Source of the DNA: Magallana gigas
Lineage: Eukaryota
Length of the DNA stretch: 64,000 nucleotides
Direction: 5' to 3'
NCBI RefSeq assembly: GCF_963853765.1
Contig: NC_088854.1
Span: 20,212,001 to 20,276,000, forward strand
Part shown: positions 60,127 to 62,304 of the stretch, one piece after another
Layout of the letters: every line of letters starts with the position of its first letter
Numbering within the stretch: the stretch's first letter is position 1
Program-made: the position numbers and the translations under genes
The notes under the pieces: model-generated
The model's input: only the letters and a program-made list of their open reading frames with translations
What the model was told of the DNA's origin: nothing
Databases searched by the model: none

Positions 60127-60828
60127 CCAGCACGAAATTAAAAAGAAAGCAAATGCATTTTATTGTTTAAATGACTCTCGAAACTTACAAGATCATATGG
60201 ATGTGATAAAAAGAACAATTTTGTAAAAAAAAATTTCGAGCCTTTTGACTGATACAGATCGGTTTTAGTTTTGTAGTTGCGTACAACAAAAATATATCTT
60301 CAAGCCACTTGATGTAGAATTTAAAATGCCAGTATTTTTTTTAAAACATTTACTAAGTAATAATTAATCTTGAAAAATCCTAACAATGCAATTAAATGTG
60401 ATTTAATTAGTAGTAAATGTTGTTTATTTTTGTAAGAAATTAATGAGCAATACAATCTTAATTGCATTCATTTGAAATAACAAGCTACCGTACCCCTTAG
60501 ATAAAAGATACATGTAATATGGTTAACAATGTTGCCTACAACTTCACGTTATTTTTGGTACTCGTATCTAGTCTTGCATATAGTTATTAAACAAGATTAC
60601 TTTATGTTTTATATCTGTAACATAAATCTATTTTTATCAGCCTATAAAAAGTATGTCATTTTTTTTAATGTCAAATGTCTTCGGTACCTGCGTGTTAATG
60701 ATGAAGTAAACTTGAACTTCTGCCAATAAACTAGGACTGGTTTGTTGCTTTAGGTAAAATCAGGAAGTCTCTGTAGAGTTATCAAACGATGAGGTATACA
60801 AATTATATCATAACTGAGGTATACATTA

Positions 60829-62304
60829 TATAAATAGTAACTGTTTGGGTCGCGTCGGTTGACAATGGTTGTCTCGGGGTGTCAATTTCAACAGTTATCC
60901 TCCCAAACAGGCACTATTTATTTTATTATACTGAATGTCTTAATTTTAAAGAAAATTTTACTGCTTTTATATAGAAACGAAGGTAAAATCAACCGACGCG
61001 AAGCGGAGGTTGACAATGGTTTTCTCGGGGTGTCAATTTCAACTGTTATTGACACCCCGAGAAAACCATTGTCAACCGACGCGAAGCGGAGGTTGACAAT
61101 GGTTTTCTCGGGGTGTCAATTTCAACTGTTATCCTCCCAAACAGGCACTATTTATTTTGTTATACTGAATGTCTTAATTTTTAAGAAAATTTTATTGCTT
61201 TTATATAGGAATAACGTGAATTCTACAGCGAACCGTACGCGCATAATTTTCGCGCATGTAACATTTTTTAATGTTACCCGTTGCTAAGTGCGTTGCTAAC
61301 GCTGAGGGTAATAGAAAATATTATTAACTGCGTCTTAACCAATCAGATTTCAGTATTTAACATGAAAGTATAATAACAAAACAAAATAAATAGTGCCTGT
61401 TTGGGAGGGTAACAGTTGAAATTGACACCCCTCGAAAACCATTGTCAACCTCCGCTTCGCGTCGGTTGACAATGGTTTTCCCGGGGTGTCAATTTCAACT
61501 GTTACCCTCCCAAACAGGCACTATTTATATAGTGTTACCCGTTGCCAAGTGTGTTGCAAACGCTGAGGGTAATAGTATACAATTATTTAATGCTTGAGCA
61601 GTCAATAGACCAGAATATTTTTCCCGATGTGCAGGGAACAGCTCAGTATGATCTATTGCCCGAGGCCAACGGCCGAGGGCGATAGATAATAATGAGCTGT
61701 TCCCTGCACCAAGGGAAAAAAATTCTGGTCTATTGACTGTTCAAGCATTAACTACTTGTTTTATTACCTAATTGCTTTTTTAGTTTTCCGGGTTTACAAT
61801 TTGCTTATTGCAGATGGTTTTCGTGCCATTATGCAATATACTAAGATTTTTTTTCTCCATCTTTTACATGCACCAAACCTGTTCCATGCATTACAACATC
61901 TCAATTTAATATTAGTTTACACAAAAAGGAGAAGTCTTCAACCCATTAGATTTTAGATAGCTTTTTACCTTATATGAGGCTTTATTTGATACTCCATTTT
62001 GATAACATTAAATTTGGTTTCACCACGTACTGAAAATAGCGTCTATGTAAAGGAATATACATTCCCTGAGAAAGGATGTAACATTATAACATACACGCGT
62101 TCTGATATACGTTGCCGGTCCAATAGATCACAGTCTATTGACCGGCGGTCCAATAGATCGCAGTCTATTGACCGGCAGTTCAAAATAGAAGAAAATATTT
62201 AATTTGTAATAAAACAACAAAATCCCTTAGATTAGGTAATAAAACGGATTACCAACTGCGTCTAAACCAATCAGATTTCAGTATTTAACATGAAAGTATA
62301 ATAA
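60829..62304. mobile_element. Head-to-tail cluster of Crypton-like palindromic elements (three type A, one type B)
   Basis: A hairpin 61386-61528 (65-bp arms, 2 mismatches); further A loops at 60850-60856, 60995-61007, 61078-61090; B hairpin 61587-61751; 30-bp tandem hairpins 62114-62177; shared tail AACTGCGTC..AACCAATCAGATTTCAGTATTTAACATGAAAGTATAATAA at ~61326-61377 and ~62254-62304. Confidence 0.8.

What the first reader, a model, noticed from the sequence alone, without database searches (positions are those of the whole stretch)
60829..62304. Palindromic elements stacked head-to-tail with hairpin loops in flip and flop orientation
Seen: one 13-nt asymmetric loop occurs as TCCGCTTCGCGTC (61451-61463, and its 3' half at 60850-60856) and as its exact reverse complement GACGCGAAGCGGA (60995-61007, 61078-61090), each time followed by the same arm and body orientation. 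60990-61119 is a zigzag of alternating 29-bp arms (loop, arm, spacer, arm', loop, arm). Copies sit end to end with TATAA-like junctions and no TIRs or TSDs. Known: flip/flop hairpin isomers mark rolling-hairpin replication (AAV/parvovirus ITRs, poxvirus telomeres) or recombinase inversion between inverted arms; Cryptons use tyrosine recombinases and short terminal direct repeats. Inference: these elements move or amplify through a hairpin-primed or folded-ssDNA intermediate and integrate preferentially next to their own kind. I do not know of flip/flop isomerism being described for them.
Basis: partly seen in the sequence, partly recalled or inferred. Interest (0 to 1): 0.78.

Follow-up and report, generated by a model that had tools for sequence, protein, structure and literature searches.

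The report
Flipped hairpin tips in oyster transposon
The stretch is a pile-up of copies of a very abundant small oyster jumping gene that ends in a long DNA hairpin, and the "flipped" hairpin tips are real but are occasional copying slips at the hairpin (about 1 copy in 20), not a sign of virus-like hairpin replication.

Summary
All four loop coordinates are exact, and copy 1 (loop half at 60850-60856) carries the tip inverted relative to the same arm and body as copy 2 (61078-61090). The loop at 61451-61463 is not a flip. It is a canonical copy lying on the other strand.

The element is a ~405-bp non-coding transposon with at least 2,000 copies in a 564-Mb oyster genome. It has no TSD and no terminal TIRs. 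It has 10-bp subterminal inverted repeats and a ~150-nt terminal palindrome. Its target is W|RTGTTA(C), often the same site in its own older copies. There are 141 precise head-to-tail junctions genome-wide. This fits a rolling-circle (Helitron/Helentron, HINE-like) element, but no autonomous partner was found.

Genome-wide, 120 copies are flipped against 2,026 canonical (about 5%). Flips are scattered over the family tree, needing at least 18 origins for 23 flips. Their breakpoints vary, and 11 of 15 scorable flips show one-sided arm conversion. One flip differs from a 98%-identical paralogous segment.

This is the known signature of replication template switching between inverted-repeat arms (spacer inversion plus arm homogenisation). 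Rolling-hairpin replication and recombinase inversion are not supported. The "zigzag" is an 83-bp local duplication found at only two genomic sites.

The scan had already met this element family on other DNA (note s1-366424).

The parts
60827..60988 (+). Copy 1 of the element, palindrome end first. The terminus TATATAAATAG starts at 60827, after the flank ...ACAT. The left arm has an internal deletion. The remnant of the tip, TCGCGTC (60850-60856), is in FLIPPED orientation. The right arm (60857-~60927) has its inner bubble converted (GTCTCGGGG). The body is truncated near 60988.
   Evidence: (D1, D2, I7). Contig of run X1 spans 60668-60879 with 0 mismatches.
60989..61376 (+). Copy 2 (subfamily B), truncated in the left arm. 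It has canonical tips GACGCGAAGCGGA at 60995-61007 and 61078-61090, a right arm with a homogenised bubble (TTTTCTCGGGG), a full body, and the tail ...AACCAATCAGATTTCAGTATTTAACATGAAAGTATAATAA ending at 61376.
   Evidence: row W +61090: flop, Lb GA, Rb TC, subfamily B.
60989..61132 (+). The 'zigzag': a tandem duplication with an 83-bp period (inner left arm + tip + part of right arm). 60989-61049 equals 61072-61132 at 100%. The junction ...CAACTGTTAT|TGACACCCCGAG lies at 61037-61061.
   Evidence: D2, I6, I8; the junction is found only here and at C10:4898545.
61377..61531 (-). Copy 3: only the terminal palindrome of a canonical copy, lying in the opposite orientation. Read on the + strand its tip is TCCGCTTCGCGTC (61451-61463). 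The terminus ...CACTATTTATATA ends at 61531, inserted exactly at the preferred target |GTGTTACCC of copy 4.
   Evidence: I3: 78-nt arms, 91%; 99% identical to more than 30 genomic copies.
61532..61575 (+). Copy 4 (older subfamily), first piece of its 3' part: GTGTTACCCGTTGCCAAGTGTGTTGCAAACGCTGAGGGTAATAG. This is the target hairpin region into which copy 3 is inserted.
   Evidence: D4: 61264-61314 vs 61525-61575, 88%. (empty sites AATTCGTT|GTGTTACCC).
62235..62304 (+). Copy 4, second piece: the tail GGTAATAAAACGGATTACCAACTGCGTCTAAACCAATCAG...GAAAGTATAATAA. It is separated from the first piece by about 660 bp of other inserted repeats.
   Evidence: D3: 61307-61376 vs 62235-62304, 90%; joint 61575->62243 in 111 reads from copies that lack the insert.
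61579..61759 (.). An unrelated palindromic repeat (89-nt arms, 3-nt loop) inserted in copy 4. It is not part of the element family but belongs to the pile-up.
   Evidence: I2.

Best explanation
The window region 60827-62304 is a nest of four copies (one full-tailed, three partial) of a ~405-bp non-coding transposon present in at least 2,000 copies in this oyster genome.

Read in Helitron convention (the reverse complement of the window's + strand for copies 1, 2 and 4), the element is: 5'-TTGTTATACTTTCATG...body...AGTATAACAA (partner of the 5' subterminal repeat), then a ~150-nt palindrome ending ...CACTATTTATATA-3'. It inserts without target duplication at W|RTGTTA(C). That motif mimics its own 5' end and occurs in a small hairpin of its own body, so copies pile into and next to each other. 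I infer, but have not shown, that a Helitron/Helentron-type HUH Rep-helicase mobilises it. Many such ORFs are intact in the genome.

In master copies the palindrome tip is asymmetric on one strand: a GCGAAGC mini-hairpin flanked by a GA/GA mismatch, plus a second CGAG/CGAG bubble 17 nt out.

The 'flip' state is a secondary mutation. During chromosomal replication the nascent strand hops to the complementary template within the palindrome and hops back. This reverse-complements the tip and converts part of one arm to the perfect complement of the other (inverted-repeat spacer inversion plus arm homogenisation by template switching). It has happened many times independently and affects about 5% of copies.

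The 83-bp 'zigzag' is a separate local slippage duplication at the same hairpin.
For: Element anatomy and copy number:
- A 159-nt query found at least 40 hits at 98-100% identity on all chromosomes.
- Consensus and ends come from 30 loci.
- Empty and occupied sites match exactly with zero overlap: AATTCGTT|GTGTTACCC and ACATTTTTTA|ATGTTACCC.
- In the flank logo the 3' flank is T at +1 in 123/131 and R at +2 in 125/131. 24 of 131 termini are nested at RTGTTACC.
- There are 141 precise head-to-tail junctions, some arrays with a 373-bp period.
- At least 150 Helitron_like_N matches exist, many within 2,600-2,900-aa open frames.
- The HINE architecture of subTIRs plus a 3' palindrome, with no TSD, is described in PMC4067079 and PMC7492417.

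Flip statistics:
- 2,026 canonical against 120 flipped copies. With a tail anchor the counts are 1,518 against 81.
- The youngest subfamily A makes up 20/81 flips but 54/100 sampled canonical copies (Fisher p = 7e-5).
- On an ML tree of the bodies, 23 flips need 18 changes (bootstrap range 16-20; shuffled labels 19.8).
- All 26 scorable canonical copies carry GA/GA bubbles. The 15 scorable flips split into 7 GA/TC, 4 TC/GA, 4 TC/TC and 0 GA/GA, and the outer marker is usually unchanged.
- L031 (flip) and L070 (canonical) are 98% identical over about 1.5 kb including both flanks. Their only structural difference is the inverted tip, with a +1-nt junction GAC|CGCTTCGCGTC.
- Flips are not enriched for neighbouring copies (6/27 vs 4/33, p = 0.32).
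- The mechanism, with spacer inversion, arm homogenisation, recurrence and reversibility, is described in PMC8604942, including GAA<->TTC triloop inversions.
Against: - The autonomous partner was not identified. The HUH assignment therefore rests on architecture only.
- Two textbook Helentron/HINE features are not met: a TT target, and a short 5-10-bp palindrome 8-35 bp from the end.
- Within subfamilies, flipped copies are not more diverged than canonical ones (if anything slightly less; Wilcoxon p = 0.04, n = 21). Simple in-place accumulation with age does not predict this, so some flips may arise at or near transposition.
- Only one paralogous pair directly shows an in-place flip.
- Subfamily counts of flips and of 100 canonical copies were made by eye from tool listings.
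Confidence: 0.68

Rival explanations
1. Flips arise during transposition itself. For example, template switching could occur while the rolling-circle machinery replicates through the 3' palindrome at the donor site, so each flipped copy was born flipped.
For: Most flips are unique insertions. Flipped copies are not older than canonical ones within subfamilies. The very young subfamily A (0.8% divergence) already has about 2.4% flips.
Against: The L031/L070 paralogs share both flanks and differ in tip orientation, which is an in-place event. A free single-stranded intermediate offers no complementary template, so it could homogenise arms but not invert the tip (inference from the mechanism in PMC8604942). 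Flip frequency differs about 3-fold between subfamilies.
Confidence: 0.13
2. Flips come from ectopic gene conversion or recombination with another copy of the family aligned in the opposite orientation. This is possible because the arms read the same on both strands.
For: There are thousands of near-identical palindromes, and copies are often nested in inverted orientation. The tract-like, variable-end pattern fits a conversion tract as well.
Against: Flips are not enriched for a second copy within 690 bp (6/27 vs 4/33). The +1-nt junction inside the CGCG of the tip looks like polymerase misalignment rather than conversion. This rival is mechanistically close to inter-molecular template switching and hard to separate from it.
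Confidence: 0.1
3. One reading: flip/flop isomers show rolling-hairpin (parvovirus or poxvirus-like) replication, or site-specific recombinase inversion, as part of how the element amplifies.
For: Both tip orientations exist on the same arm and body. The palindrome is terminal.
Against: Flips are 5%, not about 50%. Tract ends vary and 11 of 15 are asymmetric. Outer arm markers and the terminal asymmetry (TATATA vs TTTTGTTATAC) are not inverted. The palindrome sits at one end only. No recombinase ORF is present. One junction is imprecise.
Confidence: 0.03
4. Assembly artefact: palindromes mis-assembled so that tips or the zigzag are chimeric.
For: Long palindromes are hard to assemble. The zigzag could not be confirmed with the short-read data available.
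Against: 120 flips share a consistent internal structure. Flips are inherited in local duplicates, for example four tandem copies at C5:49.78 Mb. An independent contig confirms copy 1's flipped tip. The zigzag junction is also present at a second locus.
Confidence: 0.04

Closest known systems
Inverted-repeat spacer inversion and arm homogenisation by DNA polymerase template switching (Ripley-type quasi-palindrome mutation; yeast survey PMC8604942). I recall that small hairpin-loop inversions in chloroplast DNA are the classic homoplastic example; I did not read those papers.
   Same: The tip is exactly reverse-complemented. One arm is often converted to the perfect complement of the other. The events are recurrent and scattered on the tree, occur in place, and favour long arms with a very short spacer. 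Even the same GAA<->TTC triloop change is seen.
   Different: Here the substrate is the ~70-bp-stem terminal hairpin of a transposon present in thousands of near-identical copies. One genome therefore holds more than 100 independent events, with readable breakpoints marked by two built-in mismatch bubbles.
Helentron-associated interspersed elements (HINE / DINE-1-like; Cg_HINE of Crassostrea gigas), PMC4067079 and PMC7492417
   Same: Non-coding, with no TSD and no terminal TIR. A subterminal inverted repeat lies at the 5' end and just upstream of a 3' palindrome. Copy number is very high in an oyster genome, whole-element tandem arrays occur, and many Rep-helicase ORFs are present in the genome.
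   Different: The palindrome has ~70-bp stems and reaches the very 3' end, instead of 5-10 bp placed 8-35 bp from the end. The subTIR is 10 bp. The target is W|RTGTTA(C) rather than TT. There is no microsatellite or central tandem repeat. The autonomous partner was not found.
Flip/flop terminal hairpins of parvoviruses (AAV ITR), recalled from my own knowledge
   Same: A terminal palindrome with an asymmetric tip is found in two orientations.
   Different: In AAV the two forms are equimolar, the whole terminal palindrome inverts at a fixed nick site, and both genome ends are hairpins. None of these holds here.
IS200/IS605 and IS91-type HUH elements of bacteria (my own knowledge)
   Same: No TSD and no TIR, imperfect subterminal hairpins with conserved mismatches, and insertion next to a short specific sequence that resembles the element's own end.
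   Different: Those are bacterial families. No such transposase is known or was sought in this animal genome. This is a resemblance of mechanism only.

Membership tests
HINE / Helentron non-autonomous element | No target-site duplication | tested here: met
   Empty and occupied sites join with zero overlap and zero gap.
HINE / Helentron non-autonomous element | 12-15-bp subterminal inverted repeats: one 2-4 nt from the 5' end, the other upstream of the 3' palindrome | tested here: inconclusive
   A 10-bp perfect pair, TTGTTATACT (positions 1-10) and AGTATAACAA directly upstream of the palindrome, is present in the consensus. It is shorter than the published range.
HINE / Helentron non-autonomous element | Short (5-10 bp) palindrome 8-35 bp from the 3' end | tested here: not met
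   The palindrome has ~70-bp stems and ends at the terminus.
HINE / Helentron non-autonomous element | Insertion within a TT dinucleotide, with T runs at the boundaries | tested here: not met
   Insertion is at W|RTGTTA. The exact sites are T|G and A|A. The element itself starts with TT.
HINE / Helentron non-autonomous element | Autonomous Helentron with the same termini in the same genome | not tested
The one locus checked was negative.
Canonical Helitron | 5' TC, 3' CTRR, insertion between A and T, 16-20-nt hairpin about 11 bp from the 3' end | tested here: not met
   The ends are TTGTTATAC... and ...TTTATATA, and the target is W|R.
Rolling-hairpin flip/flop (parvovirus-type) | Roughly equal numbers of the two orientations | tested here: not met
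   120 against 2,026.
Rolling-hairpin flip/flop (parvovirus-type) | Inversion of the whole terminal palindrome from a fixed nick site | tested here: not met
   Tract ends are variable and mostly asymmetric, and outer markers are kept in 10 of 16 scorable flips.
Template-switch spacer inversion at inverted repeats | Spacer exactly reverse-complemented between otherwise unchanged arms, often with one arm converted to match the other | tested here: met
   11 of 15 scorable flips have one-sided arm conversion.
Template-switch spacer inversion at inverted repeats | Recurrent, independent, in-place events | tested here: met
   18 changes for 23 flips on the tree. The L031/L070 paralogs differ in tip orientation. 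Only one in-place pair was documented.
Crypton / tyrosine-recombinase element | Encodes, or is bounded like an element that encodes, a tyrosine recombinase, with short terminal direct repeats from site-specific recombination | tested here: not met
   The ~405-bp unit holds no transposase or recombinase gene; the only ORF of 80 aa or more over the pile-up, 60859-61287 (+, 142 aa, TTG start), runs through the repeats and was not examined further. The 5'-flank motif TAACAY resembles the end TAACAA but varies between copies while the end is constant. That pattern fits target preference, not a recombination core. No recombinase search of the genome was made.

The most novel reading that the evidence does not exclude
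The asymmetric features of the hairpin are the strand- and orientation-specific recognition code for the mobilising HUH enzyme. These features are the GCGAAGC mini-hairpin tip and two tandem GA/GA bubbles, kept intact in all 26 scorable canonical copies across subfamilies of 0.8-6% divergence, even though template switching readily erases them. Flipped or homogenised copies would then be transposition-dead. The more than 100 natural flips with mapped breakpoints would amount to a ready-made mutational scan of a eukaryotic rolling-circle terminator hairpin. A weaker variant is that some flips are made by the rolling-circle machinery itself at the donor site.
Probability: 0.2. Interest if true: 0.55.

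Novelty: new member of a known kind. Interest (0 to 1): 0.3.

Why it matters
As it stands, the finding is a clean natural example of a known mutational process, template switching at inverted repeats, acting on a known kind of transposon end.

Its practical value has three parts:
- It warns annotators that opposite tip orientations in palindromic repeats need not mean hairpin replication or an invertase.
- The family offers more than 100 independent inversion events with built-in breakpoint markers, which is useful for measuring template-switch tract lengths in an animal germ line.
- The element's target (W|RTGTTA, mimicking its own 5' end and lying at the foot of a hairpin in its own body) and its hypertrophied, mismatch-bearing 3' hairpin are concrete handles for working out how Helentron-like enzymes recognise ends and targets.

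Tried and rejected
- Autonomous partner. A Pfam PF14214 scan of the genome gave at least 150 Rep-like matches, but loci could no longer be fetched. The single 10-kb stretch downstream of one Rep ORF (L101) has no significant similarity to the element and no comparable palindrome. No listed Rep hit on chromosome 1 lies within 10 kb of a listed element copy (compared by eye).
- Read support. Short-read runs and Logan contigs are swamped by the roughly 2,000 copies, with depth up to 1,400x against about 1x in unique flanks. They neither confirm nor refute the zigzag and cannot show tip polymorphism at this locus.
- Strand-specific folding. Nearest-neighbour DNA energies differ by only about 2 kcal/mol between strands (-75.7 vs -73.7; tip alone -17.3 vs -16.8), so the model gives no basis for one-strand-only folding. 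The known extra stability of GCGNAGC mini-hairpins (PMC13037366, abstract) may not be captured by that model.
- Age test within subfamilies. Flips are not more diverged than canonical copies, so this test did not support simple accumulation with age.
- Neighbour-copy test. There is no enrichment of neighbouring copies at flips.
- Rfam. Only sub-threshold miRNA-precursor look-alikes appear on the hairpins, and I rejected them.
- ORFs. Nothing relevant lies in 58-64 kb.
- My first tree included flanking DNA and was discarded for the trimmed one.
Full report
**What is in the window**

The region 60827-62304 holds four copies of one repeat family plus unrelated inserts.

- Copy 1 (60827-60988) starts with the family's palindrome end (TATATAAATAG...). 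It has lost most of its left arm and keeps only TCGCGTC of the tip (60850-60856). Its right arm and body follow.
- Copy 2 (60989-61376) starts inside the left arm. It has the tip GACGCGAAGCGGA twice (60995-61007 and 61078-61090) because of an 83-bp tandem duplication: 60989-61049 is 100% identical to 61072-61132 (D2). It then runs through the complete body to the tail ...CATGAAAGTATAATAA (61376).
- Copy 3 (61377-61531) is only the palindrome of a canonical copy lying the other way round, which is why its tip reads TCCGCTTCGCGTC (61451-61463) on the + strand. It ends ...CACTATTTATATA at 61531, exactly in front of GTGTTACCC.
- Copy 4 is the 3' part of an older copy. It is split into 61532-61575 and 62235-62304 by about 660 bp of other repeats (D3 and D4, joint 61575->62243).

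Only copy 1 is therefore a true flip relative to arm and body. Its arm plus body (60852-60977) is 94% identical to that of copy 2 (61086-61211) (D1), yet the tip is reverse-complemented.

**The element**

The genome has 564 Mb in 29 contigs, and public runs that hold this stretch are labelled oyster. A search with the palindrome found copies at 98-100% identity on every chromosome.

Aligning 30 loci gives a consensus unit of about 405 bp with sharp boundaries. Older copies occur both empty and occupied by a younger copy. The comparison is exact: AATTCGTT|GTGTTACCC and ACATTTTTTA|ATGTTACCC become AATTCGTT-[TTGTTATAC...CACTATTTATATA]-GTGTTACCC, with no duplicated and no lost base.

Read in that orientation the element has the following features:
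- a 10-bp repeat at its 5' end (TTGTTATACT);
- the inverted partner of that repeat (AGTATAACAA) directly upstream of the palindrome;
- a ~150-nt palindrome that forms the 3' end;
- a predicted hairpin of about 70 bp on either strand, at about -75 kcal/mol and z = -20.7.

The flank logo over 131 ends gives the target W|RTGTTA(C). T is at +1 in 94% of ends and R at +2 in 95%. This motif resembles the element's own 5' end (TTGTTA). It also occurs at the foot of a small hairpin (TTACCC...GGGTAA) in the element's own body. In line with this, 24 of 131 ends are inserted at that very site of another copy.

Precise head-to-tail junctions (...GTATAACAA|TATATAAATAG...) occur 141 times in the genome, some in arrays with a 373-bp period.

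Several features are those described for non-autonomous Helentron/Helitron-type elements (HINEs), including in Crassostrea gigas (PMC4067079; PMC7492417): no TSD, no terminal TIRs, subterminal repeats, a 3' palindrome and whole-element tandems. The genome also carries at least 150 Helitron-like Rep matches, many in 2,600-2,900-aa open frames.

The fit is not perfect. The palindrome is about ten times longer than published ones and reaches the terminus. The target is not TT. Mobilisation by an HUH Rep-helicase is therefore inferred, not shown. I treat that as agreement, not as evidence.

**The tip is a structured stem, not a loop**

On one strand the 13 nt read GA-CGC-GAA-GCG-GA. That is a GCGAAGC mini-hairpin (GCGNAGC motifs are known as extraordinarily stable DNA mini-hairpins; PMC13037366) flanked by a 2x2 GA/GA mismatch. 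Seventeen nucleotides further out there is a second CGAG/CGAG bubble. About 43 nt out there is a single asymmetric position (TTACCC against TTATCC).

These asymmetries serve as markers of how far any inversion extends. All 26 canonical copies in an unbiased sample that could be scored carry GA/GA at the inner bubble on both arms.

**Genome-wide test of flip/flop**

I oriented copies by the non-palindromic body. The canonical tip followed by arm and body occurs 2,026 times and the flipped tip followed by the same arm and body 120 times (reversed-pattern controls 0). With an additional anchor in the tail the counts are 1,518 and 81. About 5% of copies are flipped.

It equally refutes an equilibrium of isomers.

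I assigned subfamilies by eye from the printed tails.

| Subfamily | Share of 81 flips | Share of 100 sampled canonical copies | Estimated flip fraction | Divergence from consensus |
|---|---|---|---|---|
| A (youngest) | 20 | 54 | about 2.4% | 0.8% |
| B | 8 | 6 | about 8% | 1.6% |
| C | 22 | 16 | about 8% | 3.8% |
| D (oldest) | 31 | 24 | about 8% | 6.4% |

The difference in subfamily A's share between flips and canonical copies is significant (Fisher p = 7e-5).

**Are flips one lineage or many events?**

I built an ML tree from the bodies of 106 copies, trimmed to the element (83 canonical, 23 flipped; palindrome excluded). It needs 18 changes of state for the 23 flips (bootstrap range 16-20). 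Randomly shuffled labels need 19.8, and well-supported branches alone force at least 7 changes. Flips occur in all subfamilies. The only flip pair that clusters is a local duplicate with identical flanks (L036/L037).

**Shape of the inverted tract**

Among the 15 flips scorable on both arms:
- 7 have the right arm's bubble converted and the left unchanged;
- 4 have the left converted and the right unchanged;
- 4 have both converted;
- none has neither converted.

The outer marker is unchanged in 10 of 16. In the 100 listed flips about two thirds carry the converted right-arm bubble (TTTTCTCGGGG), against 2-3% of listed canonical copies (counted by eye).

Hybrid tips also occur. L055 reads GACGCTTCGCGTC. 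L031 reads GAC|CGCTTCGCGTC with one extra base.

A reciprocal crossover between arms, a site-specific invertase, or terminal resolution at a fixed nick would give symmetric tracts with fixed ends. What is seen is tip inversion plus one-sided conversion of an arm to the perfect complement of the other. This is the two-hop polymerase template-switch product described for inverted repeats, in which spacer inversion and arm homogenisation are recurrent and reversible (PMC8604942).

The window's copy 2 shows a related product: a canonical tip with a homogenised bubble. Homogenisation alone or two successive switches could give that.

**In-place evidence**

L031 (flipped) and L070 (canonical) are 98% identical across the whole 1.5 kb fetched, including more than 1 kb of flanks on both sides. 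They differ structurally only at the tip. The flip there happened after the segment was duplicated, without transposition of the element.

Flips are stably inherited in local duplications, for example four tandem copies at C5:49.78 Mb. They are not enriched for a second copy nearby (6/27 vs 4/33, p = 0.32). That argues against a need for a neighbouring inverted copy as donor.

**What remains open**

Within subfamilies, flipped copies are not more diverged than canonical ones. I therefore cannot exclude that a share of flips arises at or near transposition. One possibility is that decay of the palindrome with age lowers the flip rate.

I found no flipped lineage that has amplified. That would fit the idea that the tip's orientation matters for mobility, but under a few-masters model it proves nothing.

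**The zigzag**

The zigzag junction (CAACTGTTAT|TGACACCCCGAG) exists only here and at one site on C10. It is a local slippage duplication at the hairpin and not a property of the family. I could not confirm it with reads, because short reads and contigs are dominated by other copies. One independent contig does confirm the left junction and flipped tip of copy 1 at single-copy depth.

**Verdict**

The head-to-tail stacking and self-targeting are genuine properties of a Helitron/Helentron-like non-autonomous element with an unusually long, mismatch-bearing terminal hairpin.

The flip/flop state is best explained by recurrent replication template switching within that hairpin, a known mutational process. 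It is not a replication or recombination mode of the element. Novelty is modest: a new, well-marked instance of known kinds.

Noticed in passing
window 61579-61759: A second, unrelated palindromic repeat (89-nt arms, 87% complementary, 3-nt loop). Its tip, CCCGAGGCC-AAC-GGCCGAGGG, has the same CGAG/CGAG tandem GA mismatch next to a triloop as the main element. Another first-reader note (s1-399420) covers this.
   Followed up: no
window 62116-62183: A 30-bp unit, CGGTCCAATAGATCACAGTCTATTGACCGG, repeated 2.3 times. Each unit is itself a small palindrome. It lies inside the DNA inserted in copy 4. There is a sub-threshold Rfam miRNA-like hit here.
   Followed up: no
G000 genome-wide: At least 150 Helitron_like_N (PF14214) matches, many inside uninterrupted open frames of 2,600-2,900 aa. 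This suggests numerous intact or recently active Helitron/Helentron elements in this oyster genome.
   Followed up: partly
G000 C6:54953938/54954311, C7:24923884/24924257, C5:53684603-53686942: Precise head-to-tail junctions of the element spaced 373 bp apart. These are tandem arrays of a unit shorter than the ~405-bp consensus. Whether they come from rolling-circle read-through or from repeated self-targeted insertion was not resolved.
   Followed up: no
G000 C10:4898545-4898569: The only other genomic occurrence of the zigzag duplication junction. It may be a segmental duplicate of the window locus or an independent identical slippage.
   Followed up: no
window 61366-61385: Copy 2's tail (..GAAAGTATAATAA) abuts the inverted copy 3 just where copy 3's subterminal repeat (AGTATAACAA) would lie. 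This suggests a deletion between two inverted copies through the shared 10-bp repeat.
   Followed up: no
L031-L060 and one search list, e.g. C5:49779881-49789635: Four flipped copies spaced about 3.2 kb apart in tandem: a segmental array that carried the flipped state along.
   Followed up: no
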